Virus record (IMG/VR): IMGVR_UViG_3300050821_013430
Coordinates: 310,001 to 374,000 of that record
Strand: one strand, 5' to 3'
Length of the DNA stretch: 64,000 bases
Position numbers and translations under genes: made by a program. The notes beneath the pieces are model-generated. The model was given only the letters and a program-made list of their open reading frames with translations. It searched no databases and had not been told where the DNA came from. Below, piece after piece: positions 1,766-43,971 of this stretch (position 1 is its first letter; each line of letters opens with the position of its first letter).

Positions 1766-1783
1766 CGTTATTCCTTTGCTTAT

Positions 1784-3065
1784 CACGTCGCAACTTCGCG
1801 ATTTCATTTGGTAATCAGGGCATAATGGTGCATCCACTTAGACCCATGATGACCTTCAAGTACAAACTCTACAAGAGCCATAAGTTTGGCTACTTAGAGG
1901 CACTTTTGCCCATCGCCTGCGATATCTACAACTGGGTGCTTTTGACCAAACGGGAAGCATATTCATGGGATAAGACCAACATCAGCCTTTATGAGATGCA
2001 GAAAATGGTCAAGGACAGGCGGAACGAGTCTAATTCGGCGTGGAAGATGATCGGCTCGCAAGCCGTAGAGCAAATCATCGATCGTATCTACAATGGCTAT
2101 GAGCGTTTCTTTGGCGATCTGAAACGGGGCGTGAAAACTTCTCCTCCTAAGCTCAAAAAGACACCTAAGTATCGGAGCATCACATTTAGACAGGGCAGGG
2201 GCTACAAACTACTCGATAACAACATCATCTACATCAGCGGACAAGGCTGGAAAGGACGAGGAGGCAAAACATTCAGGTTTCACAAACACCGAGATTGGCG
2301 GGGCCAGATCAAAACCCTTACCATCAAGAAAAACAACTTAGGCGAATGGTTCATCTACATCACAACGGACTATGAGGGAAAACTTCCAGAGCCAACCAGA
2401 ACGGGTAAAAGCGTCGGTTTGGACTTCGGGCTCAAAACATTCCTCACCACATCCGATGGTCAGATGATTCAATCTCCTCAGTTCTTCAAGCAAGGCCTTC
2501 GAGAGATCAAGAGACTGTCAAAACTGTTGAACTCGAAGAAGAAAGGCAGCAACAACTGGGAGCGGGCGAGACTAAACCTTGCTCGGGCCCACGAGAGCAT
2601 AACCAACAAGCGGAAAGACTTCCACTGGAAACTAGCAGTCAAACTTTGTCAGCAGTATGAGTTCATCTGCTTAGAGATACTCAACCTCAAAGGAATGAAA
2701 GCTTTATGGGGTCGCAAGGTTTCCGATCTGGGCTTTTACCAGTTCGTTCAGATACTCAAATGGGAGGCCCAGAAACACGGATGTAGGGTGATCCAAATTG
2801 ATCGTTGGTATCCTTCGTCGAAAGAGTGCGGTGCTTGTTGGCACATCAATCAAAGCCTTTCGTTGCGAGATCGAGAGTGGAACTGCGTTGCCTGCAACGC
2901 CCATCACGATCGTGATCTCAATGCTGCTCAGAACATACTTAGAGTGGGGTTAGCCACTCTTGCAGGAGCCGATGTCAGACCTCTCAAACCCTTGCGGAAG
3001 CAGGGCAAGAAGGCATTCGGCGTTGATAACACAAGATCGAAGCGACACAAATCGCTTCGGATCAA
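1784..3065 (+). mobile_element. Non-autonomous IS200/IS605-type element (tnpB only)
   Basis: tnpB antisense to the operon; subterminal hairpin then TCAA (3062-3065); TTAT at 1780-1783 as candidate left junction; no tnpA. Confidence 0.55.
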
Positions 3066-3069
3066 CTAA
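1825..3069 (+). CDS. tnpB: TnpB RNA-guided endonuclease
   Basis: RuvC motifs VGLDFGLK, ICLE, HDRDLNAAQNI; CxxC...CxxC Zn finger; start 1825 or 1846. Confidence 0.93.
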   Translation: MVHPLRPMMTFKYKLYKSHKFGYLEALLPIACDIYNWVLLTKREAYSWDKTNISLYEMQKMVKDRRNESNSAWKMIGSQAVEQIIDRIYNGYERFFGDLKRGVKTSPPKLKKTPKYRSITFRQGRGYKLLDNNIIYISGQGWKGRGGKTFRFHKHRDWRGQIKTLTIKKNNLGEWFIYITTDYEGKLPEPTRTGKSVGLDFGLKTFLTTSDGQMIQSPQFFKQGLREIKRLSKLLNSKKKGSNNWERARLNLARAHESITNKRKDFHWKLAVKLCQQYEFICLEILNLKGMKALWGRKVSDLGFYQFVQILKWEAQKHGCRVIQIDRWYPSSKECGACWHINQSLSLRDREWNCVACNAHHDRDLNAAQNILRVGLATLAGADVRPLKPLRKQGKKAFGVDNTRSKRHKSLRIN

Positions 3070-3231: not shown

Positions 3232-3510
3232 TTAGTGTGGTAAGTAGCATTGAGGACATACGGCTTGCTTGATCTCGGAGGCTGCGACGTACCAGAGTTT
3301 GCTGGCCCTGTACTTGTCTTCCAGACCCTCGAACTTGTCGTAAGGCTGCCAGAGCCAGCCATGACCGTTTTGACTAAGGACGATGTAGCCGGTGTCATAT
3401 GCCTGCGGCGATAATGCATTAGTTGAATTGTAGGCTACGATAGTGTGAAACTGGCCACCACCGGTATCGAAACGAACTTCAATGGTGTCGCCAATTGAGT
3501 ACTTGTGCAT
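3232..3510 (-). CDS. CxQCxxxH-tail protein, SH3-like N-domain (family A)
   Basis: MHKYSIGDTIEV...VCPQCYLPH*. Confidence 0.75.
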   Translation of the reverse strand: MHKYSIGDTIEVRFDTGGGQFHTIVAYNSTNALSPQAYDTGYIVLSQNGHGWLWQPYDKFEGLEDKYRASKLWYVAASEIKQAVCPQCYLPH

Positions 3511-3518
3511 AGTCGCTC

Positions 3519-3776
3519 CTAAGGATGGTTTTGCTTGCACTGCGGACAAACTTCTTCTACCACTGAGCCTCGGCTAACCCAGTAGAGTTTCTCGTTCTTG
3601 TACCTCTCATCCAATTCCTGGATTTCCTTGTAGAGGGTGGGGTTGCTTTCCTTCGTCCATCCATTCAACGGATTGAGAACAAAATACCCGCCATATCCAC
3701 GGCCAACGATGATATGGTAATGGGTATCGGCTACATAATGGCCCAACCGTACATGCGTTCCAACTGCGTATTCCAT
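3519..3776 (-). CDS. CxQCxxxH-tail protein, family A
   Basis: MEYAVGTHVRL...VCPQCKQNHP*. Confidence 0.75.
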   Translation of the reverse strand: MEYAVGTHVRLGHYVADTHYHIIVGRGYGGYFVLNPLNGWTKESNPTLYKEIQELDERYKNEKLYWVSRGSVVEEVCPQCKQNHP

Positions 3777-3779
3777 AGT

Positions 3780-4040
3780 CTATACTCCGTGGTGTTTGCC
3801 GCACTGAGAACAACGATCTTCGGTAATGACTTCTCCTCTGATCCACCAATACCGATGTCCATGATACTCTTGCGGCATCGCCGTGATCTTTACGTCTTCC
3901 ATCTCAAACCAGCCATCGTCTTGCAAGACCAGATATCCCTCTTCGCGATTGTAGATGGCATGCGCAGCGATCTTTTTCACCCCGGGCCCAATGCAGGTCG
4001 CATTACTGACATAGACCATCATTCCGATCGGATACTTCAT
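3780..4040 (-). CDS. CxQCxxxH-tail protein, family A
   Basis: MKYPIGMMVYV...RCSQCGKHHGV*; ATGA overlap. Confidence 0.75.
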   Translation of the reverse strand: MKYPIGMMVYVSNATCIGPGVKKIAAHAIYNREEGYLVLQDDGWFEMEDVKITAMPQEYHGHRYWWIRGEVITEDRCSQCGKHHGV

Positions 4041-10074: not shown

Positions 10075-10734
10075 CTACTTGGCTAAACCGTTGGGAGTAA
10101 TGGTTTGATGCTTCCAATGTACATCGGTCTGCACATGATCTTTGCGTACCCACTTCTGCACACACTGAGGAAACTCCTCATCGGAGAACTCTCGTTCTAC
10201 ACGGACAACCACACCTTCTCGAATAGTACCCAGAGCAGATGGCTGCTTGGCGAGATTGAGAATAAGGTCTTTCAATGTCTTGGCGGTATCCACCTTACCC
10301 TCAAACAAGACTGGTACAGTAGGCAGTCCAAGTAGGGAACAGAATCGACATACTGCACTCCAACGCAGCCAATTATCGTTGATCCTGATGCCGAACATCA
10401 TGAGGTAGCCGGGGAGTTTGTCGTAGGCTAAGGAATGCTTGGCGTAGGCGTATTCGCCAAACCATTGAGAGTCAGGAGGAATGTCGTGCTTGATGGTAGC
10501 GTGTAGGGCTTTCAACAAGTCGAAAGAAGGATGGATGGGAGGGCCCGAATGAGAACGGGCAAACACTCCGTCATGCTCTAAGCAGACATTGGAGCCATCA
10601 ATCTTCTCCGTAATGACAATGGGAACATTGAGCAATGCTTCTACACTGTCAGCGATCTTGTCGTCGTTGGTGGCACCTTCCGAGAAAGGTAGGTGCATGG
10701 TGCGGGGATACTTAGGGCTGGTCATGACTGACAC
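10075..10734 (-). CDS. ATP-dependent RNA ligase family protein
   Basis: KYPRTMHLPFS, TEKIDGSN (motif I), EGVVVR, KWVR. Confidence 0.85.
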   Translation of the reverse strand: MSVMTSPKYPRTMHLPFSEGATNDDKIADSVEALLNVPIVITEKIDGSNVCLEHDGVFARSHSGPPIHPSFDLLKALHATIKHDIPPDSQWFGEYAYAKHSLAYDKLPGYLMMFGIRINDNWLRWSAVCRFCSLLGLPTVPVLFEGKVDTAKTLKDLILNLAKQPSALGTIREGVVVRVEREFSDEEFPQCVQKWVRKDHVQTDVHWKHQTITPNGLAK

Positions 10735-11081: not shown

Positions 11082-11357
11082 TCATTGAGAGATGCCTTTC
11101 GTTGAGTGGAATTGACCGCATTGTGGGCAGAGACAAGCCTTCAATGTATCGAGAGCCGCGAAGATCGGATCTGGATTACCAGCGGCATCTTCGGGATCAG
11201 GATACCAGCCCATTCCGTCATAGTGATCGTACCAGTAAGGAGACACCTTCCCATAATCCATCAGAGGGCGCGCTGCTGTATCGCAGTACTGGCATAGGAT
11301 GATTGGGGCTTCCGAACGGTAGGTAAGCGTCTTGGCGCAAACAAGGCAGTCGCTCAT
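11082..11357 (-). CDS. CxQCxxxH-tail protein, N-terminal CxxC..CxxC finger (family B)
   Basis: MSDCLVC...CQYC...CPQCGQFH. Confidence 0.75.
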   Translation of the reverse strand: MSDCLVCAKTLTYRSEAPIILCQYCDTAARPLMDYGKVSPYWYDHYDGMGWYPDPEDAAGNPDPIFAALDTLKACLCPQCGQFHSTKGISQ

Positions 11358-11587
11358 TGGTGATATCCCTTACACTGAGGACAGAGTGAGGCTCGTGTTG
11401 CTAACACCCTGTCTTGGTTTTTCGAGGTATTAGCCCAGCCATCTCCGCCATACCTTTCCCAGTAAGAGCGGATATACTCACAAACGGTGTCTCCCAGCCT
11501 ACGAGCATCAATTTTAGCGCAGGAGGCGCAGATCACAAGCGACTTTGTTTCGTACCTGCACTCTCGATCACAAACTACGCAGATCAT
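11354..11587 (-). CDS. CxQCxxxH-tail protein, family B
   Basis: MICVVC...CASC...CPQCKGYHQ*. Confidence 0.75.
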   Translation of the reverse strand: MICVVCDRECRYETKSLVICASCAKIDARRLGDTVCEYIRSYWERYGGDGWANTSKNQDRVLATRASLCPQCKGYHQ

Positions 11588-11829
11588 GGATGCACCTGCT
11601 TGCATTGAGGACAGAGGGCCAACTTCAATTGGACTGCCTTTATTCTCTCTCGCATCATTAGCGTATCCAAGAATCCGTTCCCGTCATGCTCCGCCCACCA
11701 ATTACGAAGGTGCTCAGATGGTTCTTTCCCTTGCAAGCGTTCATCGATCTCATCGCAAGCGGGGCAGAAGAACAATGGCAATTCGAGGCCATACCTACAC
11801 TCGCGTTCGCATGCTGCACACTTTCTCAT
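11584..11829 (-). CDS. CxQCxxxH-tail protein, family B
   Basis: MRKCAAC...CPAC...CPQCKQVHP*. Confidence 0.75.
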   Translation of the reverse strand: MRKCAACERECRYGLELPLFFCPACDEIDERLQGKEPSEHLRNWWAEHDGNGFLDTLMMRERIKAVQLKLALCPQCKQVHP

Positions 11830-12086
11830 AGGTGAAACTCTCCACATTGAGGGCATTGAGTGTTCCACTGCTTTGAGTGATTCCAAAAGGCAACCCAATC
11901 TTTCAGGCAATCGCACGCAGCATGCGCGAGGGTCGACCTCTCATTGGGGTCTCCCTTGGCCTTCAATTCCACCTTCGCCCCACACACCGAACATATGGCG
12001 GGCACCCTGACCTTGGCAAACTTCTTGCTGCCCACTGCTTTCAGGCCAAACCAACTCGGGTTGACCCAATACTCTAAGAACTCCAT
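11826..12086 (-). CDS. CxQCxxxH-tail protein (MEFLxYW subgroup)
   Basis: MEFLEYW...CSVC...CPQCGEFHL*. Confidence 0.75.
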   Translation of the reverse strand: MEFLEYWVNPSWFGLKAVGSKKFAKVRVPAICSVCGAKVELKAKGDPNERSTLAHAACDCLKDWVAFWNHSKQWNTQCPQCGEFHL

Positions 12087-12346
12087 CAATGCACCTCACC
12101 ACATTGTAAGCACAACTCGTTCCATTCCTTGCACATAGCCCACGCATCAGAGACATTGTGGACATGTTCGCATCTATCAGACGTCAGATAGGAACGCTCA
12201 CTTTTAGACCCAGGCTGCAACAACTTGATGGGATACTTGCAGATAGGGCATTCGGTTGGCATTCTGATCTTGATCGGTCTGCGAGGCATGCCTTCTGGCA
12301 AGACTCGAATAGCCCAAGAGTTGATCCAGTAGTCTAAGAACTCCAT
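12086..12346 (-). CDS. CxQCxxxH-tail protein (MEFLxYW subgroup)
   Basis: MEFLDYW...CPIC...CLQCGEVH*; tandem paralog of previous. Confidence 0.75.
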   Translation of the reverse strand: MEFLDYWINSWAIRVLPEGMPRRPIKIRMPTECPICKYPIKLLQPGSKSERSYLTSDRCEHVHNVSDAWAMCKEWNELCLQCGEVH

Positions 12347-15824: not shown

Positions 15825-16115
15825 CTATGGATGCGTTTTGCCGCATTGGGGGCAGACCTCCACTGAATCGAGAGAGACCCAAAAGACTCGTCGACCATTG
15901 TATTGTTGATCCCATTCACGAGCGATGCTACTATCTACAAGCACCCAGCCCCGATCGTTGAGTACGATATACCCCTCTTGGGAGAGATAGACGCCATAGC
16001 CAACGATAGTGGTCGGTCTGGTTTGATTCGTGTTTGGACTCGGCCGCTCTAATAGGCTGCCAGCAGCGGATGCACCAATTCTAACCTGAGTGCCGATGGG
16101 GAGTTTGGTGATCAT
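15825..16115 (-). CDS. CxQCxxxH-tail protein, family A
   Basis: LPIGTQVRI...TIVGYG...GYIVL..RGW...CPQCGKTHP*. Confidence 0.75.
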   Translation of the reverse strand: MITKLPIGTQVRIGASAAGSLLERPSPNTNQTRPTTIVGYGVYLSQEGYIVLNDRGWVLVDSSIAREWDQQYNGRRVFWVSLDSVEVCPQCGKTHP

Positions 16116-20986: not shown

Positions 20987-23900
20987 TCAGTTCTCCATTG
21001 TCTTGGGCGTTTCGGTTTCTTCGGACTCGGATACTGTTTCAATCGACTCTTCCGCGCAGACACTTGCGCCTACGGTAGATTCCGCCTTCGGAATCCCCGA
21101 GAGGGATTCGCTAATCACCGGCAGCAACTGCTCCAAAGCCATCTCAATCATCGAGTTGCCGATGACCGAAAGACTCTGCACTCTAAACTCAGTGGCCAGT
21201 CGTTGCGCCTTTTGATGCTCAGAGAGTTTAGGGGCGTAGGTAAAGAGCAGACCCAGAATGGCGCTAACCAAAGCATCGCCAGCCTCCGTCTCCATCAATC
21301 CCTTGATGGATTCGACCATCTGACTGTTCTTGCCCTGTTGTGTTAGCATTCGGACAATCCCGGCCTTGGCCGCTGCATTGATCTGAGTTGCTGCAACTCG
21401 GTATAGAGCCGAGGATGCGTCTTCTTTGATCATGGCACCGAAAGGAGTACGATGGATAGCGACTGCTGCGGCCGTGGCCGCAACGGCTGCCGTTGCTTCT
21501 GGCACAAACTTGGGTTTGGTCTCTATCGGGGCGGTACCAGTAGAGGGACGGAAGCAATTGGCTTCGCTCTCCAATCCAGTGACGAACCAGGTGCGTCCGC
21601 CTTTGGCCTGTTCGACATATGCGGGATCGATGAAACCCGCGCCGCAGTCATTGTGCCATGAATGGCCTCTGGAATCGAGAGGAAGACTCAGCAGATAGCC
21701 AGGAGCGCTAGTGTTAGTCCTGATTCCAATGACGGTGGCTCGTACACTACTGCGAGTTTCGTCTCGCTTTGACTGCGAGTGATAGCAGTAATGCCCATCA
21801 TCCGCGACGAAGAGGTCTACCTTGTCGCCAACCTTGGTGGTCGGGATATACTTCGGCTTCTCTTCCTTCTTGACTTCGACCGGCTTGGGCTTTTCTTCGA
21901 GAGGCGGAGGGGCGTCTGGATGTACTTTCTTGAAGGCATCGGCGATGTTGATATACCAGCATCGAGTGCCTTTTTCCATCACCATCTTCTTGTAGACGAG
22001 ATCGACTTCTTTGAGGCGTCCCTGATAGTCAGATATTGGCCAACCGATGTTCTCCTTAGTCTCGAAGTTGACTAGGATCTGACCTTCACCGACACCGACT
22101 ACGGTTGCTAAAACGGTCTTTGGAACGGCTGCGTCGCTGGCGGTAATCGAACACAGACTTCCGTTGTTGTTTTGGTAGACCTCGATTACATCTCCCACCT
22201 TGACTCCAAGAACGGTCTTGGACTTGCGGAAGAACTCCTCGTCGTTGATCCAGTAAAAGGACTTGCCTTTGGACTTCTCCCGGTATTCGGGAGTGATCCA
22301 CGAAAACTGAGTCCCATAACTATGGCCATATCCCAACGAGGGATCCAGCATCGCCATCGGCTTACCATTCGTATCGAAGCCGCAGATGGTGGCCTTGATA
22401 GGAGACAGGGTGATATCCGGATCGTAACCCAGATCAACCAATCCTCCGGGGGAGCGGCGGAAGATCTCGATCTCATCGCCAACCTTCAATCCGTAGTTGC
22501 CTTCGAGGACATAAGTGACTCCCGTTTTGGCAGGCTCGGCCGGAGTTTCCGCGACAGGTTTCTCTTCCTTGGCTTCGGCCTTTTCAGTCTCCGTCTCGGC
22601 CTTCTCCTCTACTTCTTCATCAGGAGCGCTGGCTTCCGACTGACCCTCCTCGGCCTCAGTCTCTTCCGTTTTGGGCGAAGGGACTTTGGTGCCAAACAGG
22701 AAGCCAACCTTCTTGAAGGCATTTGCCGAAGAGAGTTCCCAGCAGTCCTTATCTTTGACCTCTTCCAAATATCGAGGGTCAATGTTGTACTGCGTACCAC
22801 CCTTAGAATGACCAGAGTTGACACCGGCTGCTTTCTTGTCAAAGACAGCCACCGGATAGCCATGAGTGCTGAAGGCGACGACGGTAGCACGGACGGGCGT
22901 CAATGACTTATCGCCTACCGATCCATCAGCGAGATACTTCTCGGTCTTCCGATCAATCGCGATCACATCTCCGATTCTGACCCCAAGAGAGGTTCTCTCG
23001 AAGGCTTTCTCTGAGTAGATGAATTGGAAGAACTTCTCATCATAGTCATCGACATCCAGACCGAAATCATTGGGGCTATGACGACAGTAATGGTCGTCGC
23101 TATCATAGGCTACGACTGGGCGTCCAGCCGAGAAGGCAACCACCTTGGCAGGAAGGGCCTCCTGATTGAGATCAGGCTCCTCGAACATATCGATGACTTT
23201 ACCGTCCGAGTCCTTGCGAAGATAGACCTTATCTCCGACTTTGAGACCCAAGGTCTTGTCCGTCTCACCGAGCGTAAACACACTATTGGCGGTCAGTCTA
23301 TGAATCGCAGCGTTTCGCTTCTGCGCTTCCCTGGCGTACTTGGGATCGATCTCGAAGTCGAGATACTCCTGATTGGTGTTTTGGAAGTCTTTGGAATCCA
23401 GCATGGCAAGCGGATTGCCATCGAAGAATCCAACGATGGTGGCCACTTCCGAGCCCACGGCGTCTTTCGCCAGGCTGGTTTCGTCAAAGCATTCGCCATC
23501 CTTATTGACCTTGATCTCGACCCGATCTCCGATCTTGAGTCCGAAAGAGTCCAACTGCGGCTTCTCGACCACTACGAAGTCAGCCCGATCAAACAGAGGC
23601 CAGAAGGACTTGTCCTTGAACTCTCCCTTGACCCTCTCCTCTATGCCGAGGTCTTCCATCGAGTCTTCGAGACCATCGTTGATGCTGGAATCGAAGGCGA
23701 CAAGGGGTCGATCCTCACTATCGAATCCAGCAACTACAGCCGGGATCCTCTCGGACTCCTTGTCCGCAGTGTAATCCTCGTTGATCAGATCTCCGTCCTC
23801 ATCGCGGTACATCTCGATCTTGTCGCCGATCTTGAGACCGAGCCTGATAGAGGGTTGACCCAAACGTCTGCAAAGACGCTTGTCAGTTTCGGGGCCGAAG

Positions 23901-24646
23901 CAAGACTTGCTATCCAACTCCCAGAGGGGGCCGTATTCCGATTCCTCGATATACTCCTCATCAATTTCGTAGTCTTCGCCGTGGTTGCCGTTGCCATCGT
24001 TGTTTTCCGCATCATCCAACAGAACGACCGGCTTGCCTTCCTTAGTGAAAGCGACAACAGTGGCAGTTTCGGTCTCGTACTCTTCGTCCCGCTCTTGATC
24101 ATCTTGGCAGAGATCACCGTCCTCATTGCGGAAGACTTCGACTCGATCTCCGATCTTGAGACCAAAGGTTTTCTCGGGGCTGTACTTGGGACTCACCTCG
24201 AAAGCATCCTTATGAATAAGGCCCCAGAAGGACTTGCCTTCGGTCTCGCCTTGGTACTGTTGGGCGACGTTGAGACCTGCTGGTGTTCTTGACAAACTGA
24301 GACTGCTGAAATCGAGATCCAACATGGTCAATACGGCGGGACCACTGAATCCAACGACAGTAGCGGTTGCGGGGGCGAAGGCCTCCTTGTTAGCCGGAGC
24401 GCCGTTGTCGCAAAGCAGATCCGTTCGATGTCGCCAGATCTTGACCCGATCTCCGACCTTGACTCCCAGTTTGGGAGAGGCATAGGACATGGCATCTTCG
24501 AGAGTCTCATAGCCGTTTCCGTCAGTAGACCCATCACATGCTTCGCAGATATTGAAGTAGCGTTCGCGGGCGGAGGAGCCATACTTGCCCCAATCCTTGC
24601 ACGGGGCTCCGCAAGCGCAACAGTTGGTCATAGGTTTAGTGGCCAT
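20987..24646 (-). CDS. 1219-aa protein: N-terminal Zn finger, 9 SH3-like repeats, helical C-domain
   Basis: Nine (G)(L/V)(K/R)(V/I)GD(R/K/V/E)(V/I) starts about 95 aa apart with AT(V/I)VG(F) and FW motifs. Confidence 0.85.
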   Translation of the reverse strand: MATKPMTNCCACGAPCKDWGKYGSSARERYFNICEACDGSTDGNGYETLEDAMSYASPKLGVKVGDRVKIWRHRTDLLCDNGAPANKEAFAPATATVVGFSGPAVLTMLDLDFSSLSLSRTPAGLNVAQQYQGETEGKSFWGLIHKDAFEVSPKYSPEKTFGLKIGDRVEVFRNEDGDLCQDDQERDEEYETETATVVAFTKEGKPVVLLDDAENNDGNGNHGEDYEIDEEYIEESEYGPLWELDSKSCFGPETDKRLCRRLGQPSIRLGLKIGDKIEMYRDEDGDLINEDYTADKESERIPAVVAGFDSEDRPLVAFDSSINDGLEDSMEDLGIEERVKGEFKDKSFWPLFDRADFVVVEKPQLDSFGLKIGDRVEIKVNKDGECFDETSLAKDAVGSEVATIVGFFDGNPLAMLDSKDFQNTNQEYLDFEIDPKYAREAQKRNAAIHRLTANSVFTLGETDKTLGLKVGDKVYLRKDSDGKVIDMFEEPDLNQEALPAKVVAFSAGRPVVAYDSDDHYCRHSPNDFGLDVDDYDEKFFQFIYSEKAFERTSLGVRIGDVIAIDRKTEKYLADGSVGDKSLTPVRATVVAFSTHGYPVAVFDKKAAGVNSGHSKGGTQYNIDPRYLEEVKDKDCWELSSANAFKKVGFLFGTKVPSPKTEETEAEEGQSEASAPDEEVEEKAETETEKAEAKEEKPVAETPAEPAKTGVTYVLEGNYGLKVGDEIEIFRRSPGGLVDLGYDPDITLSPIKATICGFDTNGKPMAMLDPSLGYGHSYGTQFSWITPEYREKSKGKSFYWINDEEFFRKSKTVLGVKVGDVIEVYQNNNGSLCSITASDAAVPKTVLATVVGVGEGQILVNFETKENIGWPISDYQGRLKEVDLVYKKMVMEKGTRCWYINIADAFKKVHPDAPPPLEEKPKPVEVKKEEKPKYIPTTKVGDKVDLFVADDGHYCYHSQSKRDETRSSVRATVIGIRTNTSAPGYLLSLPLDSRGHSWHNDCGAGFIDPAYVEQAKGGRTWFVTGLESEANCFRPSTGTAPIETKPKFVPEATAAVAATAAAVAIHRTPFGAMIKEDASSALYRVAATQINAAAKAGIVRMLTQQGKNSQMVESIKGLMETEAGDALVSAILGLLFTYAPKLSEHQKAQRLATEFRVQSLSVIGNSMIEMALEQLLPVISESLSGIPKAESTVGASVCAEESIETVSESEETETPKTMEN

Positions 24647-24767
24647 CGTTATTCCTCTTTCGCTAAGGGAAGTTCACTCACTCTACAAACGGCGAATCGG
24701 GCGCGGCAGATTGGACTTACATCCAATCCACCGGCCCGACCAACCGACAATCAACTACAACTGGTTA

Positions 24768-26393
24768 TCAGTTGACGTGATTGACCTTGGGGGAAGCCGT
24801 TTCCTCTTCCACCACTTCCGTCTCCGTCGTTTCGCCGATACGACCCTTTTCAGTCGTGGTCGTGCTGGGCAAGTTGCTCAGCGCCGAGGTCAGGACAGGG
24901 AGGAAGTGTTCGACAGCGGCGCCGATCACTTCGTTGCCCACGATGGTCAACGACTGAGTACGGAACTCACCTGCCAACTTCTGAACCCGGGGATCATCGC
25001 TGATCTTGGGCATGTATGTGAGAGCAAGACCGGCAATGGCATCCACCAAAGCGGTTCCGATCTCCGTCTCCAAGAGATCCTTGACAGCGGCCATCTTGCC
25101 ACCATCGAGGCCCTTGCTTTCCATCAGACGCAAGAGAGCGACTTTCACTCCCTTGGCGATCTGGGTGGAAGCCACACGGTACGCCGCGTTTTCGGCGTCG
25201 CCCTTGAACATGTCCATGAACGTCTGCTTGTCGCTGGTCTCACTCATTGTCTTGCTCTCTTTCTTGGTTGCTACTTTGCTGGTTGTCTTGGTTGTTTTGG
25301 TTCCGAAACCCTTCTGCTTCAGTTTCTTCCGGCGATCATCATTGATGCCGGGAAGTTCTTTGTACGTGCCCTTCTTGATTCGATCCGTTGTTTCCGCTAC
25401 GTTGACCTCCGGGAGCATGGAGAAGATCACTCCGTCCTTCTTCATTGCCAACATGTTGACATCGGCATCCTCCGTACCAGGCGTCAGCGGCGTGGTCAGA
25501 GTGTTGTTCCCGACGACAACATCCATCATCACCTCATACCCGTTTTTGGAAACGGAGTAGAGAGGCTTGGTGGTAATGTCCTTGCCTTGGCCATCCTTGG
25601 CATAGGAGACGAAGTTGACCTTGAAACCTGCGGCCTGCAACTTGGAGACGTAGTTGTTCGGCTCCTTACCTGCCATGAACAGATTGACGTCAACGAAGTC
25701 CTCGTTTCTGATCTGGTCTCTGACCACTCCGCCGTAGAAGTAGTCGGTGTTTTCCAGATGCTTGAGCATCTCCGCGACAATCGTCTGACGCTGGGTCTTC
25801 TTGACGATGGCCTTCTCGTTCTCCACTTTGGAGTCCACCTTCTTGAAGGACTCCTTGGAACAGAGATACCAGAATCGACGCTTGGTCGGATCGGGACACA
25901 ACTCCTTATCCACGAAGGGATGGTAGAGAGTTGCTTCCGTCATACCACCGACGAAGCCTTCGTCAATCATGACGACCGGCTGCTCCTTGGTATTCCAGCC
26001 CACTACCGTGGCAGTGGCACGATGCTGAGTCTCGTTCCAACTGGAATCGCACAGTCGGGTCAACGTGTTATCTGTGTATGGAAGCTCCACACGATCTCCT
26101 ACTTTCAACGCATAGTCCGCTTTTGCCATTGTCTTCTCCTCTTTGATCTGGTTCTTGTAGCAATCCGAGTAGTTCCGATAATGCTCACAGGCATTCCCAT
26201 TGAACCAGAAGTTCTGGCCATCTCTGGTGCCTGCTCCGCCTAACGATGGTAAGGCTTTGGAACATAGAGGGCAAACCTTTGGCAGTTTGACTGCAACGCC
26301 CTTAGTCGGACTAAGATGCGTTTCCACATGTTCTTGTAGCCATGTCCTGCTGATGAACACCGATACGGTGTCAATGATCTGAGTTTGACTCAT
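24768..26393 (-). CDS. Multidomain protein: Zn finger, SH3-like repeat, nucleotidyltransferase (CCA/polyA-head-like) domain, helical C-domain
   Basis: YALKVGDRVEL; YGGVVRDQIRNEDFVDVNL; C-domain homologous to 20987..24646. Confidence 0.75.
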   Translation of the reverse strand: MSQTQIIDTVSVFISRTWLQEHVETHLSPTKGVAVKLPKVCPLCSKALPSLGGAGTRDGQNFWFNGNACEHYRNYSDCYKNQIKEEKTMAKADYALKVGDRVELPYTDNTLTRLCDSSWNETQHRATATVVGWNTKEQPVVMIDEGFVGGMTEATLYHPFVDKELCPDPTKRRFWYLCSKESFKKVDSKVENEKAIVKKTQRQTIVAEMLKHLENTDYFYGGVVRDQIRNEDFVDVNLFMAGKEPNNYVSKLQAAGFKVNFVSYAKDGQGKDITTKPLYSVSKNGYEVMMDVVVGNNTLTTPLTPGTEDADVNMLAMKKDGVIFSMLPEVNVAETTDRIKKGTYKELPGINDDRRKKLKQKGFGTKTTKTTSKVATKKESKTMSETSDKQTFMDMFKGDAENAAYRVASTQIAKGVKVALLRLMESKGLDGGKMAAVKDLLETEIGTALVDAIAGLALTYMPKISDDPRVQKLAGEFRTQSLTIVGNEVIGAAVEHFLPVLTSALSNLPSTTTTEKGRIGETTETEVVEEETASPKVNHVN

Positions 26394-26497: not shown

Positions 26498-27256
26498 ATG
26501 GACGAGAACTTTATCACTGAACGTATCTTACCGAACATCAAGATCACGCCAACTGGTTGTTGGATATGGCAACTATCCACTACCAATGGTGGATATGGCC
26601 AAATTTCCTTTCGAAGGAAACCACAAGCAGTACATCGTGTAGTGTATTTGATGACGCACGGCGTCATACCAGAAGGACTGTATGTTTGCCATCTATGCGA
26701 CGAGAAACTCTGCTGTAATCCGGAACATCTTGATGCTCTCACCCCAAAAGAGAACACTATGGACTGCGCTCGGAAAGGTCGTCTCAACCATGCCACGTAT
26801 CAGCATGGACACGAAAAGTGCACTCCTGAAAACTTCTGGGAGAGAACGACCAAACGAAAAACGGGGTGTTGGGAATGGAATCGTTCAACCGACCATAAGG
26901 GATACGGTCAAGTGAAATTCGATGGTAAAACCAGAAGAGCCCATCGAGTGGCTTATACGCTGATCCACGGTAGCATCCCAGAAGGAATGCTTATATGTCA
27001 TGCGTGCGACAACAAACTTTGCTGCAACCCAGCACATTTGTTCCCTGGAACGGCATCAGACAATGCAAGAGACTTGGTGAAAAAGGGACTACACAAACGT
27101 GTAGCGGCCAAACTTACCGACAGACAAGCGGTACGGATTAGAGAGTTGTACTCCGATGAGTCGTACACCTATCAAGAGTTATCTGATGAGTTCAATATGT
27201 CGCTAACTGCCATTGGCAACATCATCCGCGGTACAAGCTTCAAGCACTTACTATAA
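26498..27256 (+). CDS. Homing endonuclease with two HNH domains
   Basis: Twice CWxW...GYG...HRV.Y...G.IPEG..(V/I)CH.CD.K.CCNP.HL; HTH tail. Confidence 0.9.
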   Translation: MDENFITERILPNIKITPTGCWIWQLSTTNGGYGQISFRRKPQAVHRVVYLMTHGVIPEGLYVCHLCDEKLCCNPEHLDALTPKENTMDCARKGRLNHATYQHGHEKCTPENFWERTTKRKTGCWEWNRSTDHKGYGQVKFDGKTRRAHRVAYTLIHGSIPEGMLICHACDNKLCCNPAHLFPGTASDNARDLVKKGLHKRVAAKLTDRQAVRIRELYSDESYTYQELSDEFNMSLTAIGNIIRGTSFKHLL

Positions 27257-30466: not shown

Positions 30467-30522
30467 CAGTGTATCTCTCCGCATTGAGGACAGGAACGAT
30501 CGCAGCAACCACAAGAGGTCAT
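30466..30522 (-). CDS. 18-aa tail-only micro-ORF MTSCGCCDRSCPQCGEIH (not in ORF track)
   Basis: ATGA overlap upstream, TGATG overlap downstream, perfect tail. Confidence 0.6.
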   Translation of the reverse strand: MTSCGCCDRSCPQCGEIH

Positions 30523-30755
30523 GCTTGATGCACCTTCCCACACTGCGAGCATTGGGCTTTGAGTTTGACCAACGCCTCTTCGTATGCAGGCGTGCGCAGG
30601 AATGAACATCCACCTTTGGATTCCCAGTAGGTGCGATCGAAACTATGCATCCCAATCATCTCGTGCACCTTCTCGCCGCAGTCCGTACAGAACAACAGGT
30701 CATCTCCCCAACGAACACGAGAGAGAGGCGTTTGGCAGTGATCGCAACGGTTCAT
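30519..30755 (-). CDS. CxQCxxxH-tail protein, family B
   Basis: MNRCDHC...CTDC...CSQCGKVHQA*. Confidence 0.75.
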   Translation of the reverse strand: MNRCDHCQTPLSRVRWGDDLLFCTDCGEKVHEMIGMHSFDRTYWESKGGCSFLRTPAYEEALVKLKAQCSQCGKVHQA

Positions 30756-30994
30756 AATGAGTGCTCCTTACCGCACTGGGGACAGATCTTTTTCTCCCTG
30801 AGGAGGAGAGCGTACGAGTAGTAGGCGCCAGTAATCATGCCTGGGTATGGTCGATGATTGATGTTCTGTTCGGCTAACTTGGGATGCGCGGCTCTCTGCA
30901 CTGCAACATTGCAACACTTGCACATGTTGTACGTTCTGGAATCAGGTTGGGGCAAACTGACTGGTTGGTTGCAGCAGAAACACACGCTACTCAT
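30752..30994 (-). CDS. CxQCxxxH-tail protein, family B
   Basis: MSSVCFCC...CPQCGKEHSL*. Confidence 0.75.
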   Translation of the reverse strand: MSSVCFCCNQPVSLPQPDSRTYNMCKCCNVAVQRAAHPKLAEQNINHRPYPGMITGAYYSYALLLREKKICPQCGKEHSL

Positions 30995-31226
30995 GGGTAG
31001 CACCGCACTGAGGGCATATCTTGCCCTTCAACTGATTGACATAGGTGATGTACTTGCCTTCGAAGGAGAGTTGGATGGCGTCTTCCTTTCGGACTTCTGA
31101 CCAAGGAGGATCGTCAAACAGTGCGCCAGCCGCATTGGCACAAGTGAAGCAGATCAGGTACGAATACTTGGGATCGCAGTTCCTGAAAGGGAGTTGCTTG
31201 CCGCAGCAGTAGCAAGTGCTGGTCAT
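30987..31226 (-). CDS. CxQCxxxH-tail protein, family B
   Basis: MTSTCYCC...CFTC...CPQCGATHE*. Confidence 0.75.
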   Translation of the reverse strand: MTSTCYCCGKQLPFRNCDPKYSYLICFTCANAAGALFDDPPWSEVRKEDAIQLSFEGKYITYVNQLKGKICPQCGATHE

Positions 31227-31462
31227 GAGTGAAACTCTCCGCATTGGGGACAAGCCCCATTATCTCGACGCACTTTGGCTATGGCACGAAGTCGGTCTGG
31301 CTGATCTCCAAAACCAAAGGCGTCATAACTCAGATGCGCAGTAATGGGTATCTCGCCCAAAGCCTTCCAAACCTTGGAAGCACAATCCCAACATACCATT
31401 ACACAGCCCTTCACGTCGTCTCGTGTATAGGTGGCGGGACAGCAGGCACATCGTTTGGTCAT
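31223..31462 (-). CDS. CxQCxxxH-tail protein, family B
   Basis: MTKRCACC...CWDC...CPQCGEFHS*. Confidence 0.75.
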   Translation of the reverse strand: MTKRCACCPATYTRDDVKGCVMVCWDCASKVWKALGEIPITAHLSYDAFGFGDQPDRLRAIAKVRRDNGACPQCGEFHS

Positions 31463-33139: not shown

Positions 33140-33694
33140 CTAATGCAACTCCGTCATCGCGATCAGCGCTTCGAGCGAAATGGGTTTGTATTCATGAACG
33201 TCAACACCTACGTTGATCATCTTGTCTTTCCGAAGCCATGCTTTGTGCACGTGGCCACAAATTAGGTAGCCACCATCGTTCTTCGGGCGCCACTCAGGAA
33301 AACGAGCCTCATGCCCTGTATCATCGTCCTTCATGTACGGTAGGTGATTGACAAGGAAACGCTCAACACGTGTCTCCATCATCACATCCTTGAATCCATA
33401 TCCGATGTATCGCTTGATGGCTTCTTCGTGGTTCTTACGACCAGCGAAAGTGCGATCATGGTTGCCAGAGATCAGGTACTTGATACCTTTGAGAAGGGGA
33501 ACAACGATCGGTACGATGCTCTCCTTCATAGAGAGGTCTCCCACATTATACACCACATCATCATCTTGCACTACGGCATTATAGCGGGCGACGAGTTCTC
33601 GGTTCATCTCGTCGATGTTGCGGAAGGGTCGCTCACTGTACTCGATAATCCGAGCATGCGATAGGTGGAAATCACTCGTAAACCTCGTTGTCAT
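33140..33694 (-). CDS. Calcineurin-like metallophosphoesterase
   Basis: SDFHLSH, VGDL, GNHD, H, GHVH. Confidence 0.9.
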   Translation of the reverse strand: MTTRFTSDFHLSHARIIEYSERPFRNIDEMNRELVARYNAVVQDDDVVYNVGDLSMKESIVPIVVPLLKGIKYLISGNHDRTFAGRKNHEEAIKRYIGYGFKDVMMETRVERFLVNHLPYMKDDDTGHEARFPEWRPKNDGGYLICGHVHKAWLRKDKMINVGVDVHEYKPISLEALIAMTELH

Positions 33695-34158
33695 CTCGTC
33701 ATCCACTCCCAACATCGTTGCCACCAGGGCTTCTGCGACGAATGAGCAACCAACGGCCCCTCAGGCTCATCTTGATCCTTAGGCTGGTTATCCACCCACT
33801 CTTTGATCGTTTCCTTCGACAAGGCAGGCAAGATGTACTTCGCCCGCAGTCTTTGTCCAATCGCATAGACGTCCTTGTCGTACTCTTTGCTGACGTCTTC
33901 CATCTTCATGTCGTCAAAGCCATACCAGATGGAATACACCTGCGAGTAGCCGAGCCTCACACCCAACAAGATCGAGAAGCAATCAACGCTGGTGTCGAAG
34001 TGTTCATTCTGGGAATTGAGTAGGGCGGTGATGGGGCAGCACTCATTGCCATTGTTGCTACTGAAACGCTTGTCGATGATCTTGCCACCAGCGGAGATAT
34101 GCTTGTCCGCCGCTTCGGTCAGCAGTCGTTCCAACTTGTTCAACTGTTCGGGCGTCAT
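33691..34158 (-). CDS. Hypothetical protein
   Basis: ORF track; CCP motif. Confidence 0.5.
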   Translation of the reverse strand: MTPEQLNKLERLLTEAADKHISAGGKIIDKRFSSNNGNECCPITALLNSQNEHFDTSVDCFSILLGVRLGYSQVYSIWYGFDDMKMEDVSKEYDKDVYAIGQRLRAKYILPALSKETIKEWVDNQPKDQDEPEGPLVAHSSQKPWWQRCWEWMTR

Positions 34159-38341: not shown

Positions 38342-38611
38342 TCATTGGACGATGGCTTCTCTTTCGATGTTGGGGTGGAGACGACCACACTGAGGACAGA
38401 GATGCTCTTTCAATCTGGCTGGCATCTCTGGTTTGCCATAAGACCACCAACCACCATATTCACCTGCACGGTTATAGATCCCATCTCCCACCAATTTGCG
38501 GTCTACCAGGTTGTAAAGGGTGGTGCTACAATCAGGACAGAGATAGGTGTAGAGAGGCTCTTCGTTCGTTTTGAGCACGGGCTGTTTGCAGAGGACACAG
38601 TTAGGGGTCAT
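38342..38611 (-). CDS. CxQCxxxH-tail protein, family B
   Basis: MTPNCVLC...CPDC...CPQCGRLHP (10-aa extension). Confidence 0.75.
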   Translation of the reverse strand: MTPNCVLCKQPVLKTNEEPLYTYLCPDCSTTLYNLVDRKLVGDGIYNRAGEYGGWWSYGKPEMPARLKEHLCPQCGRLHPNIEREAIVQ

Positions 38612-38814
38612 AGGTGAAGCCTTCCGCATTGAGGGCAACAGATCTTCTTGAACTCAGCGTGGGCACTACCATCCTTGTAGATGGCAATGGAGGTTGACCG
38701 ATCATTAGGCCAACGATACCTACAGCAATCACCGCAAAGGAAGATGATGCCGGAGACTGAGCCATTCTTACGATCAGGTAGTGGCTTGTTGCAGTAATGG
38801 CAATAGGGGATCAT
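38608..38814 (-). CDS. CxQCxxxH-tail protein, family B
   Basis: MIPYCHYC...CGDC...CPQCGRLHL*. Confidence 0.75.
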   Translation of the reverse strand: MIPYCHYCNKPLPDRKNGSVSGIIFLCGDCCRYRWPNDRSTSIAIYKDGSAHAEFKKICCPQCGRLHL

Positions 38815-39023
38815 GGGTGTCTCTTGCCACACTGAGGGCAAAGTAAGGGTTTGAGGTCGTTGGGCACATCATAGAATGGATAGCCACCAGTACCTGTACC
38901 AGTACTGAAACAGTGCTTACTACCATAGGCAATGACAATACACTCCGTGCAATACCAAGAGTAGTTTGCTTTCGGGCATAAGGGAAGCGGTTTGTCGCAA
39001 GCAGCGCATACAACGTCCATCAC
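38811..39023 (-). CDS. CxQCxxxH-tail protein, family B
   Basis: VCAAC...CTEC...CPQCGKRHP*. Confidence 0.75.
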   Translation of the reverse strand: MMDVVCAACDKPLPLCPKANYSWYCTECIVIAYGSKHCFSTGTGTGGYPFYDVPNDLKPLLCPQCGKRHP

Positions 39024-41314: not shown

Positions 41315-41419
41315 TGGTTGAGTCTTTCTTGGGTTAGGGTGAATTTACTGAGAGGTGAGGATATAGAATGTGGTAGGGGTGATTTGGGCAGTAGTAAAAC
41401 ACGAGTAATTGAGGATGAG

Positions 41420-42409
41420 ATGACGAAGAGCAGGGGCATTAGGAAGCCGTTTACAGAAGAGGAACAGAACGCAATCTGCGTAGAATACAGTGGTGGCGCG
41501 CTTATGGGCAGTCTAACAGAGAAATACAGGCGTTCTGCGAATACGATTAGGAAGTGTCTTGTAGCACACGGTGTTCAGAGTATTGATCATCACGTTGGTC
41601 CATCCAAGTACATCTATAACACGCAAGTCTTCACCAACGAAGATGACATCAGCTACTACCTGCTCGGAGTATTCATGACCGATGGATGTGTTCGGTTAGA
41701 CGTTCAGAAACGGAAGGGCAAAGAGTACCCCTACTATCGCGTCTCTTTGACCAGTAAAGATGGGGATTGGATGGAAACCATCACCGATCTCATTTGTACG
41801 GGGAGAAAACCAACCGAACGCAAAACTCGCAACTGCTACGAAGTAGAGTTCAACTCCGGTGAGATAGCACAATGGTTGATGAGTAAGGGATGTTTGCCCC
41901 GGAAATCTCTTACTTTGCAGTTCCCAGATGTTCCGCCTCAATATCTACCTGACTTCTTGCGTGGTGTAATCGATGGTGATGGTATGGTTTCAATGACTAA
42001 ACCAGGACGCATAATGACAATGCGTTGCGCCGTATTCACGGGAAGTCTTGATTTCGCTAATGGTATTGAAACAGCGATCAGAACACTTGGTGTTGAAAGC
42101 AAGATACTCGTCCGCAAGATGCAACCCAGACTCATTGGAGATCGAATGGTTCTCTCTGAGAGAGATAACTATGCGGTGCGTCTGAAAAACGGTGAGAACG
42201 CCTGCAAGCTCCTAAAACTCGCCTATTACTCAGGACATCGGCTTGCCTTAGCGCGTAAGGCAAAGACAGCCCAAGAGCTGATCGCATATTGGGAACGAGA
42301 GTTCCGATGCGTTGATTGCGATCAGCTCTTGGTCATTGGCAAGAGATCGCGTTGCACGAAATACTGCGACGGATGTCGCATCACACGCACAACGACCAGG
42401 ATTCAGTAA
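41420..42409 (+). CDS. LAGLIDADG homing endonuclease with N-terminal HTH
   Basis: YLLGVFMTDGCV and DFLRGVIDGDG; GAGG SD before ATG 41420. Confidence 0.88.
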   Translation: MTKSRGIRKPFTEEEQNAICVEYSGGALMGSLTEKYRRSANTIRKCLVAHGVQSIDHHVGPSKYIYNTQVFTNEDDISYYLLGVFMTDGCVRLDVQKRKGKEYPYYRVSLTSKDGDWMETITDLICTGRKPTERKTRNCYEVEFNSGEIAQWLMSKGCLPRKSLTLQFPDVPPQYLPDFLRGVIDGDGMVSMTKPGRIMTMRCAVFTGSLDFANGIETAIRTLGVESKILVRKMQPRLIGDRMVLSERDNYAVRLKNGENACKLLKLAYYSGHRLALARKAKTAQELIAYWEREFRCVDCDQLLVIGKRSRCTKYCDGCRITRTTTRIQ

Positions 42410-43711: not shown

Positions 43712-43971
43712 GGGTGTTGTTCTCCGCATTGGGGGCACACCTTGCTTTTGAGACGGGCTCGGACTGTCTCGATGCCTGAATTGCGTCTTGCGCAAAGACC
43801 CTCACCACCCATCGATTGCCAGTGTTCCCGCCGATACTCCTCGATTTCAAGGCCCATCTCATTGAACACCAACTCAGCGCAAGATGGGCATGCCAGGGTA
43901 TAACCACTGCCTGGCAGCCCATACTCACACTCAATCAGTTTGCCGCAGACTGCACACGGGCGCGGGCTCAT
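43708..43971 (-). CDS. CxQCxxxH-tail protein, family B
   Basis: CAVCG...CPSC...CPQCGEQHP*; coupled to Clp stop. Confidence 0.75.
   Translation of the reverse strand: MSPRPCAVCGKLIECEYGLPGSGYTLACPSCAELVFNEMGLEIEEYRREHWQSMGGEGLCARRNSGIETVRARLKSKVCPQCGEQHP

What the first reader, a model, noticed from the sequence alone, without database searches (positions are those of the whole stretch)
20987..26393. The same modules reappear in two giant proteins: a 9-repeat SH3-like array and a shared helical C-domain
Seen in sequence: the 1219-aa protein has a family B-like finger, nine diverged repeats of about 95 aa and a C-domain. The repeats resemble the single N-domain of family A (xxGDxVxV...TIVG...VL...Y...(F/Y)W). 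The adjacent 541-aa protein has a finger, one repeat, a nucleotidyltransferase-like domain and a clearly homologous C-domain (YRVA(A/S)TQI...ETE.G.ALV.AI.GL..TY.PK.S......LA.EFR.QSL..(I/V)GN). Inference: a mix-and-match toolkit in which the SH3-like unit is used singly with the zinc tail or in arrays with the helical C-domain. The two large proteins may hetero-oligomerise through that domain and could be the scaffold for tail proteins.
Basis: partly seen in the sequence, partly recalled or inferred. Interest (0 to 1): 0.62.

Follow-up and report, generated by a model that had tools for sequence, protein, structure and literature searches.

The report
Shared C-terminal handle in jumbo-phage proteins
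Two neighbouring genes of a 473-kb soil phage carry the same undescribed C-terminal helical module behind different front ends (nine SH3-like barrels in one, a degenerate nucleotidyltransferase in the other), and that module defines a large family of jumbo-phage proteins whose function is still unknown.

Summary
The 1219-aa protein has a Cys4 finger, nine diverged ~95-aa repeats and a C-domain. The neighbouring ORF has one repeat, a class II nucleotidyltransferase head-like domain and a homologous C-domain (45% identity, E 6e-38).

The repeat folds with confidence as an SH3-like small beta-barrel. It is probably a remote homologue of the window's small "family A" proteins (hhalign E 5e-5; shuffled controls far lower).

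The main result is the C-domain. It is a confident four-helix module followed by an acidic tail. It matches nothing in Pfam, PHROGs, NCBIfam or the PDB. It marks at least 1113 protein clusters, always at the extreme C-terminus of proteins of 153-3283 aa. These occur as 2-8, often tandem, paralogues in jumbo-phage genomes, behind interchangeable front ends: SH3-like arrays, nucleotidyltransferases, fingers, or none.

So "mix and match" is right and reaches far beyond this genome. Hetero-oligomerisation has only weak in-silico support, and the "scaffold for zinc-tail proteins" idea was not tested. The 541-aa protein's finger may not be translated with the rest, and its transferase has Asn in place of a catalytic Asp.

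My best reading is that the C-module is a common docking handle, but its partner is unknown.

The parts
20987..24646 (-). Gene for the 1219-aa protein (P0001). pI 4.7, net charge -71.
   Evidence: ORF and translation. Charge. A syntenic orthologue of at least 995 aa with nine or more repeats lies in L005.
24485..24646 (-). N-terminal Cys4 finger (aa 1-54; C9, C10, C12, C16 ... C34, C37), of family B type.
   Evidence: Cys positions. hhalign of giant-protein fingers against family B fingers: probability 96.6%, E 5.8e-10, shuffled control scores <=9.6. Conserved in the orthologue P0006.
22703..24484 (-). SH3-like repeats R1-R6 (aa 55-648).
   Evidence: HMM domain hits and alignment. Model of R2: pLDDT 87.4. 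Fold matches.
22511..22702 (-). E/K/P/T-rich acidic linker (aa 649-712, net charge -12).
   Evidence: Sequence and charge.
21542..22510 (-). SH3-like repeats R7-R9 (aa 713-1035), with a short Pro/Lys/Glu linker at aa 908-935.
21077..21448 (-). C-terminal four-helix module (aa about 1067-1190).
   Evidence: Family HMM match E 1.8e-48. 45% identity to the P0002 module. Best-scoring stretch in the exhaustive search.
20990..21076 (-). Acidic tail ending ...PKTMEN (aa 1191-1219).
24768..26393 (-). The 541-aa ORF (P0002). The public gene call is the 453-aa form that starts at M89.
26130..26393 (-). N-terminal 88 aa: a CPxC...CEH finger-like unit homologous to five small proteins. It lacks their CPQCG tail and may be a fused or separately read unit.
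   Evidence: jackhmmer E 1e-18 to 1e-30. Weak genome match. Absent from the orthologue P0004.
25824..26129 (-). Single SH3-like repeat (aa 89-190). The alternative start codon M89 is at 26127-26129, with GAGGAG six bases upstream.
25284..25823 (-). Class II nucleotidyltransferase head-like domain (aa 191-370). It has GGVVRD...DVN (the second catalytic Asp is Asn) and DADVN.
   Evidence: phrog_1614, E 0.013. Motifs. Profile against the PDB finds only CCA-adding enzymes and poly(A) polymerases. PolyA_pol in two relatives.
24849..25217 (-). C-terminal four-helix module (aa 393-515; helices at aa 392-426, 431-441, 444-460 and 468-506).
   Evidence: Model with pLDDT about 97 over the module. Family HMM match E 2.9e-59.
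24771..24848 (-). Disordered acidic tail (aa 516-541).
   Evidence: pLDDT 53-65. Tail statistics.
3232..4040 (-). Three tandem family A genes (3232-3510, 3519-3776, 3780-4040): one SH3-like-looking N-domain plus a CPQC..H tail.
   Evidence: jackhmmer, alignment A3, hhalign against the repeats.
15825..16115 (-). Fourth family A gene (96 aa).

Best explanation
P0001 and P0002 are tandem paralogues of a large, so far undescribed family of jumbo-phage proteins.

What defines the family is a compact C-terminal four-helix module with strongly conserved polar residues (K, Y-R, Q, E-F-R, G-N). A short R-V/I motif follows, then an acidic disordered tail that usually ends in K-x-A/M-x-A.

I read this module as a common docking handle. 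It would take whatever is fused in front of it to one conserved partner or site in the infected cell.

The front ends are interchangeable payloads:
- In P0001 the payload is a Zn finger plus nine fast-evolving, very acidic SH3-like barrels joined by flexible linkers. This would act as a long multivalent binding or spacer array.
- In P0002 the payload is one barrel plus a CCA-adding enzyme / poly(A) polymerase-type nucleotidyltransferase head. It has Asn at the second metal-binding Asp, so it is probably a binding-only or impaired enzyme.

Shown: the anatomy, the homologies, the fold classes, the family's size and its strict C-terminal position. Inferred: the docking role and action inside the cell. 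Unknown: the partner.
For: Family size and position:
- An exhaustive profile search found 1113 cluster representatives at E<=1e-3 (620 at <=1e-10). The best stretch was the C-module in nearly all of the top 150, in proteins of 153-3283 aa.
- In all 153 sequences checked, the module ends within 39 residues of the C-terminus.

Front ends among 151 members:
- 28 carry the SH3-like repeat (1-9 copies).
- 29 carry the nucleotidyltransferase.
- 16 carry an N-terminal Cys4 finger.
- 16 are stand-alone modules.

Conservation:
- The C-module is far better conserved than the payloads. It is 45-60% identical, with R22, G62 and G71 invariant and K13, Y21, Q27, E92, R94 and N103 in at least 90% of sequences.
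- P0001 and its orthologue are only 24-30% identical, and only 2 of 9 repeats pair one-to-one.
- The conserved repeat positions are Gly or hydrophobic core positions, not a shared polar site.

Structure and distribution:
- The module model has pLDDT about 97 over four helices, and the tail is disordered.
- The family occurs in IMG/VR jumbo-phage records of 198-428 kb, with 2-8 copies per record, often in tandem.
- The neighbourhoods are non-structural: RNA ligase, SpoU methylase, PNKP, DnaJ, release factor, homing endonucleases.
- In this genome the genes lie about 200 kb from the terminase region.
Against: - No partner was identified. No gene is consistently adjacent across 26 loci. A ClpB-like neighbour recurs in only one of four other records.
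- The module has no informative structural relative. Foldseek against the PDB gives E>=1.1. The best VIA Z is 7.5 at rmsd 10 A, below the noise level for helical models. The Atlas search gives TM<0.4.
- There are no expression data; only soil DNA runs hold the sequence.
- Intracellular action rests only on gene neighbourhood, and jumbo phages scatter their virion genes.
- A conserved module could itself be the effector rather than a handle.
Confidence: 0.45

Rival explanations
1. The C-module plus tail is a capsid-loading and ejection signal. Family members would be packed into the head through a scaffold, portal or core partner and delivered with the DNA, so the transferases and barrel arrays would be injected cargo.
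For: - The logic fits: a conserved terminal handle on diverse payloads, with tandem paralogues.
- From my own knowledge, giant-phage head-internal proteins (phiKZ inner-body paralogues, T4 internal proteins with a capsid-targeting sequence, MuF-toxin fusions) follow this logic.
- An R-[VI]-x-[ED] motif follows the last helix in about 45 of 99 tails that have R[VI]. This resembles a T4-type prohead-protease site.
Against: - The genes lie among non-structural genes, far from the head and tail modules.
- P0001 has net charge -71, which is awkward beside packed DNA.
- The motif is absent from P0001 and P0004.
- tblastn found no member in any cultured phage record, so no virion proteome can be consulted.
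Confidence: 0.2
2. One reading: the two C-domains hetero-oligomerise, and the SH3-like array then serves as a scaffold for the many small proteins with a zinc tail.
For: Complex prediction of the two C-modules gave weak support:
- Score 0.39; the best of 3 controls scored 0.00.
- The mark was reached by 58 of 80 solved complexes and 2 of 110 mismatched pairs.
- At 0.60 or under, it was reached by only 7 of those 80 solved complexes and by both mismatches that passed.
- The three runs agree in at least 0% of their contacts.
- The partner's pLDDT is at least 62.

The genome also holds 74 ORFs with a CPQCG-type tail, in the same 210-392 kb region and on the same strand.
Against: - The three runs share no contacts, and such a pass is more often wrong than right.
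- The monomer model is already compact and confident.
- Other phages hold 2-8 paralogues or stand-alone modules, so a specific heterodimer is not the family's rule.
- No binding of tail proteins to the repeats was tested.
- The repeats have no conserved polar surface positions.
Confidence: 0.12
3. The C-module is itself the active part, for example by binding and blocking a host protein. The N-terminal arrays would only tune avidity, solubility or timing.
For: - 16 of 151 members are stand-alone modules with only the tail.
- The module carries the family's conserved polar residues.
Against: The recurrent fusion to an enzyme domain with an intact DxD motif in most members suggests that the payloads do work of their own. 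Nothing found identifies a host target.
Confidence: 0.13
4. The array is decaying repetitive DNA or a gene-calling artefact with no function.
For: The repeats diverge fast and have shuffled relative to the orthologue.
Against: - The 3.66-kb ORF is intact.
- All nine units keep the core residues of the fold.
- An orthologue with nine or more units keeps synteny in another metagenome.
- Related arrays of 3-8 units occur elsewhere.
- An independent contig is 99.985% identical.
Confidence: 0.03

Closest known systems
SH3-like small beta-barrels (Tudor, PWWP, CAP-Gly, KOW, chromo-barrel)
   Same: The repeat model (pLDDT 87) aligns with these domains over 55-75 residues at rmsd 2.1-3.3 A and Z 4.8-5.9. 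The top of both structural lists contains almost nothing else.
   Different: Z stays below 6 and Foldseek E is at least 0.16. The repeat has an extra helix and two extra strands (about 95 aa, against 55-70). It lacks the CAP-Gly GKNDG motif and the SH3 ALYDY motif. Pfam SH3_2 scores only E 0.037, below its cut-off.
SpoVT-AbrB / MazE antitoxin domain (Pfam PF04014) and other GD-box cradle-loop barrels
   Same: The motif G-L-K-x-G-D-x-V at the start of every repeat matches profile positions 18-38. The summed E-value is 4.6e-15. Designed double-psi barrels match the same stretch weakly.
   Different: Only about 20 of 48 profile positions match. The model is an SH3-like barrel, not a swapped-hairpin dimer. 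What is shared is a local beta-turn motif, not the domain.
Class II nucleotidyltransferases (CCA-adding enzyme, bacterial poly(A) polymerase; Pfam PF01743 head domain)
   Same: The GGxVRD motif, the first catalytic Asp and a DADVN motif at the place of motif B are present. The profile finds only these enzymes in the PDB, and the match to human TRNT1 covers 120 residues.
   Different: P0002 and P0004 have DxN instead of DxD. P0002 itself gave no Pfam PolyA_pol hit even at E 10. The neck, body and tail domains that hold tRNA are replaced by a Lys/Thr linker and the C-module.
Phage and secretion systems with a conserved handle on variable payloads (MuF/SPP1 gp7-toxin fusions, T4 capsid-targeting sequence, Bartonella BID domain plus charged tail). 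Recalled from my own knowledge, not tested here.
   Same: The logic is the same: one conserved module at a fixed terminus, many unrelated payloads, several paralogues per genome, and (as in BID) a helical domain followed by a charged tail.
   Different: No sequence or fold similarity was found. The handle here is C-terminal and its tail is acidic. No link to a capsid or a secretion machine is shown.

Membership tests
SH3-like small beta-barrel fold class | A five-stranded, strongly bent barrel of about 60 residues that superposes on known members. | tested here: met
   The model has pLDDT 87.4. The top 50 VIA matches are almost all Tudor, PWWP, CAP-Gly, KOW, chromo or SH3 domains, at Z 4.4-5.9 and rmsd 2.1-4.0 A over 51-75 residues. 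The Z values are modest, so this holds at fold-class level only.
SH3 domain proper (Pfam SH3_1/SH3_2) and CAP-Gly | The family profile scores above its gathering threshold, and the signature motifs (ALYDY; GKNDG) are present. | tested here: not met
   SH3_2 scores E 0.037, 14.2 bits against a cut-off of 21.8. Neither motif is present.
SpoVT-AbrB / MazE (PF04014) | A full domain of about 45 aa that forms a swapped-hairpin barrel. | tested here: not met
   Only profile positions 18-38 match in each repeat. The predicted fold differs.
Family A of this genome (single barrel plus CPQC..H tail) | The N-domain is homologous to the repeat. | tested here: inconclusive
   hhalign of 45 repeats against 4 family A proteins gives probability 67%, E 5.1e-5 and score 27.4 over 67 columns. 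The reversed control scores 10.5 and 20 shuffles score 14.2 or less. The repeat HMM alone gives E 0.23.
Family B finger of this genome | A C-x2-C ... C-x2-C unit homologous to the N-terminus of P0001. | tested here: met
   hhalign probability 96.6%, E 5.8e-10, score 35.8, against shuffled scores of 9.6 or less. Shared Cys spacing inflates such scores somewhat.
Class II nucleotidyltransferase head (PF01743) | The GGxVRD motif and a helical turn before the catalytic strand. | tested here: met
   P0002 aa 221-226 read GGVVRD. Profile A7 matches positions 12-49 of the Aquifex poly(A) polymerase and positions 23-143 of TRNT1.
Class II nucleotidyltransferase head (PF01743) | The two catalytic Asp residues of the DxD motif. 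| tested here: not met
   P0002 has D-V-N and P0004 has D-L-N, whereas the other ten members aligned in A7 keep DxD.
Class II nucleotidyltransferase head (PF01743) | The Pfam gathering score is reached. | tested here: not met
   P0002 aa 185-400 gave no PolyA_pol hit at E<=10. Two relatives reach E 6.1e-5.
New C-terminal four-helix module family (defined here) | A module of about 120 aa with the Y-R, Q, E-x-R and G-N residues conserved, placed at the extreme C-terminus and followed by an acidic tail. | tested here: met
   P0001 scores E 1.8e-48 and P0002 E 2.9e-59 against the family HMM. Position. Tails.
Any curated family covering the C-module (Pfam, PHROGs, NCBIfam, PADLOC, PDB) | A significant profile or fold match. 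| tested here: not met
   profiles; folds. BFVD finds only uncharacterised phage proteins.

The most novel reading that the evidence does not exclude
The C-terminal four-helix module with its acidic tail is a cargo-addressing signal peculiar to jumbo phages. It would load a changing set of effectors (nucleotidyltransferases, SH3-like arrays, finger proteins) into one phage-built structure, such as the capsid interior for injection or an intracellular compartment. That would make it a phage counterpart of the BID, MuF or encapsulin cargo tags.
Probability: 0.2. Interest if true: 0.8.

Novelty: new variant of a known kind. Interest (0 to 1): 0.5.

Why it matters
Jumbo and mega-phages are full of large proteins with no annotation. 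This work defines a module that ties together more than a thousand such protein clusters. It shows that they are built by shuffling a few units (SH3-like barrel, Cys4 finger, CCA/poly(A)-type transferase head) in front of one conserved handle.

If the handle's partner were found, the location and likely role of the whole family would follow at once, including several intact nucleotidyltransferases that may act on host or phage RNA. The module is small, folds confidently and has stand-alone versions, so it is easy to test at the bench.

Tried and rejected
- Nucleotide search of the 5.4-kb region against GenBank phages found no match.
- tblastn of two C-modules against the same phage collection found no match even at E 0.1.
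- The word-index protein search with P0002 gave only three hits. That is why I used the exhaustive search.
- The word-index search with the repeat profile found one stand-alone 103-aa homologue and no family A protein.
- The word-index search with the C-module profile gave nine unnamed proteins. Cluster look-ups gave no names.
- The scan of prokaryote genomes with a consensus-like member found no relative.
- Fold searches for the C-module in the PDB, BFVD, the ESM Atlas and VIA-wide were uninformative.
- A HEPN-like reading of the helical module next to the transferase was considered and dropped. The R-x(4-6)-H motif is absent and no HEPN structure appeared in the fold lists.
- A membrane-anchor reading was dropped. 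The maximal 19-residue hydropathy has a median of 1.35, and only 16% of members reach 1.6.
- A Clp-degron reading was dropped as a general rule. A ClpB-like gene is present in only one of four other records.
- Neighbour clustering over 26 loci found no universal partner gene.
- PADLOC gave nothing relevant.
- Promoter and terminator scans were at shuffle level.
- Only soil DNA runs hold the sequence, so I did not use read laying and the start codon of P0002 could not be settled.
- The genome reads well under the standard code, so no other code was used.


Full report
**Setting.** The window is bases 310001-374000 of a 472,749-bp IMG/VR virus record judged complete. The genome reads well under the standard code. 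It encodes a large terminase subunit about 27% identical to those of cultured tailed phages, collagen-like and pectate-lyase-like fibre proteins and a PHP-type polymerase. It is therefore a very large tailed phage. The only public runs that hold the region are soil metagenome DNA. A second soil contig is 99.985% identical over 20.5 kb.

**The observation.** Both ORFs exist as described.
- The 1219-aa protein (P0001) has nine units of about 95 aa. They are anchored by G-L-K-x-G-D-x-V, A-T-V-V-G-F and F-W-x-L...A-F, and are 20-36% identical to one another.
- An HMM built from these units finds all nine, plus one unit in the neighbouring ORF, at i-E 1e-24 to 1e-34. It finds nothing else in the genome at E<=1.
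- The two C-domains are 45% identical over 123 residues, E 6e-38.
- P0001 begins with a Cys4 finger. This finger and the fingers at the N-termini of 15 related proteins align with the genome's small family B fingers at hhalign probability 96.6%.

**The repeat.**
- With a 20-row alignment, AlphaFold2 gives a confident model (pLDDT 87.4). It is a small barrel followed by a helix and two short strands.
- Foldseek finds nothing significant (best E 0.16). VIA-align gives Z 4.4-5.9. Both lists consist almost wholly of PWWP, CAP-Gly, Tudor, KOW, chromo-barrel and SH3 domains. "SH3-like" is correct at fold-class level. Membership of SH3 proper or of CAP-Gly fails.
- The strong Pfam MazE/AbrB score (E 4.6e-15) comes from nine copies of a 20-residue GD-box turn, not from the domain itself.
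- The conserved positions are Gly or hydrophobic core residues.
- P0001 is very acidic: pI 4.7, net charge -71.

**Family A.** Four small proteins in the window (3232-4040 and 15825-16115) share I-G-x-x-V, I-V-G, Y-x-V-L, G-W, Y and W-V, followed by a CPQC..H tail.
- Against a profile of 45 repeats they score hhalign probability 67%, E 5.1e-5, score 27.4 over 67 columns.
- A reversed control scores 10.5, and twenty column shuffles score 14.2 or less.
- Remote homology is likely but not proven.

**The 541-aa ORF (P0002).**
- The public gene call starts at M89, giving 453 aa. Both M1 and M89 have Shine-Dalgarno-like sequences upstream.
- Residues 1-88 are homologous to five small proteins of the genome that end in a CPQCG-type tail (E 1e-18 to 1e-30). 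The copy here lacks that tail and runs in frame into M89. The 57%-identical orthologue P0004 has no such extension.
- An HNH homing endonuclease gene sits divergently just upstream.
- I read this as a recent in-frame fusion whose translation is unproven.
- The middle domain has GGVVRD, a first catalytic Asp and a DADVN motif. A 12-row profile finds only CCA-adding enzymes and poly(A) polymerases in the PDB (E 9e-4 to 7e-2; the match to TRNT1 covers 120 residues).
- The second Asp of DxD is Asn in P0002 and P0004. The other ten members aligned in A7 keep DxD.

**The C-domain, the main result.** The word search had left the protein open, with only three hits, so I ran the exhaustive profile search.
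- It found 1113 cluster representatives at E<=1e-3, 620 at <=1e-10 and 210 at <=1e-30. The best stretch was the C-module in nearly all of the top 150, in proteins of 153 to 3283 aa.
- In all 153 sequences checked, the module ends within 39 residues of the C-terminus.
- A 140-row alignment shows R22, G62 and G71 invariant. K13, A19, Y21, Q27, G44, P78, L89, E92, R94, G102, N103, P115, L124 and P125 are present in at least 90% of rows.
- The model is very confident (pLDDT about 97): helices at residues 8-42, 47-57, 60-76 and 84-122 of the module, then a disordered tail.
- The tail has a median length of 38 residues and is 25% acidic. It usually contains R-V/I soon after the last helix and ends K-x-A/M-x-A.
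- No Pfam, PHROG, NCBIfam or PADLOC family covers the module. No solved or Atlas structure resembles it above noise. BFVD returns one uncultured-phage family member and several uncharacterised proteins, mostly of phages I recall as T5-like.

**Architecture and distribution of the family.**
- Of 151 members, 28 carry 1-9 SH3-like repeats, 29 the transferase domain, 16 an N-terminal Cys4 finger, and 16 are stand-alone.
- The largest members contain other small barrels, with weak FeoA, CusF, Cul7-CPH and DUF4314 hits.
- In IMG/VR the family lies in records of 198-428 kb. Four such records hold 7, 8, 2 and 3 copies, and tandem arrays are common. This genome has two copies plus a 73-aa remnant.
- A syntenic pair (P0004, then a protein of at least 995 aa with nine or more repeats and two fingers) occurs in another metagenome. 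The giant proteins are only 24-30% identical, and only repeats 1 and 5 pair one-to-one. The P0002 orthologues are 57% identical.
- Neighbourhoods are non-structural. No neighbour is universal.

**Interpretation.** The module's strict position, its high conservation (polar residues included) and the free exchange of what precedes it point to a common docking handle with interchangeable payloads. That much is inference, and the partner is unknown.
- A capsid-loading signal, a hetero-oligomerisation domain and an effector in its own right all remain possible.
- Complex prediction for the two modules gave weak support only. The score was 0.39 and the best of 3 controls was 0.00. The mark was reached by 58 of 80 solved complexes and 2 of 110 mismatched pairs. 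At 0.60 or under it was reached by only 7 of those 80 solved complexes and by both mismatches that passed. The runs agree in at least 0% of their contacts, and the partner's pLDDT is at least 62.
- The scaffold-for-tail-proteins idea was not tested.

**Novelty.** The barrels, the finger and the transferase head are known kinds of unit. The C-module is a large family without description in the libraries and the papers I searched. I rate the whole as a new variant of a known kind (modular phage proteins) and of moderate interest.

Noticed in passing
G000 210-392 kb, including much of the window (e.g. window 3232-4040, 11082-12346, 15825-16115, 30519-31253, 38608-38841): 74 ORFs of at least 40 aa end in a C[PS]QC[GKYH] motif within their last 16 residues. 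All are on the minus strand. 36 of them also carry an upstream CxxC...CxxC finger (family B). This is a very large lineage-specific expansion of small zinc-tail proteins.
   Followed up: partly
window 11826-12089 and 12086-12346 (-); G000 281497-282355: Five small proteins (86-101 aa) are homologous to residues 1-88 of the 541-aa ORF and end in a CPQCG/CLQC tail. The copy fused to P0002 has lost that tail.
   Followed up: partly
window 26498-27256 (+), 55162-56202 (+), 41318-42409 (+): Two HNH_3 homing endonucleases and a LAGLIDADG protein. The first lies divergently next to P0002 and may be linked to the local fusion.
   Followed up: no
window 1756-3069 (+) and 63287-64000 (-, runs on to 64522 outside the window): Two TnpB-type genes (OrfB_IS605 plus a Cas12f1-like TNB domain) lie at the two ends of the window. 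A TnpB gene also lies near the related giant protein in L034.
   Followed up: no
window 43968-46187 (-): A ClpB-like double AAA+ ATPase (AAA_2, ClpB_D2-small). A 62%-identical copy sits next to the C-module gene cluster of a 428-kb phage. It is absent from three other records.
   Followed up: partly
window 10075-10734 (-) and 33140-33724 (-): An RNA ligase (PF09414, E 8e-27) and a calcineurin-like phosphoesterase. RNA-repair genes also neighbour family members in other loci.
   Followed up: no
G000 376973-377194 (-), 3 kb beyond the window: A 73-aa ORF that matches only positions 32-72 of the C-module profile. It is a remnant of a third paralogue.
   Followed up: partly
whole window: G+C is 0.49-0.545 in the window against 0.453 for the genome. 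The small-gene region differs in composition from the structural and replication part.
   Followed up: no
L005 11502-14486: The orthologous giant protein has a second Cys4 finger inserted between repeats 1 and 2, so the finger is itself a mobile unit within these arrays.
   Followed up: no
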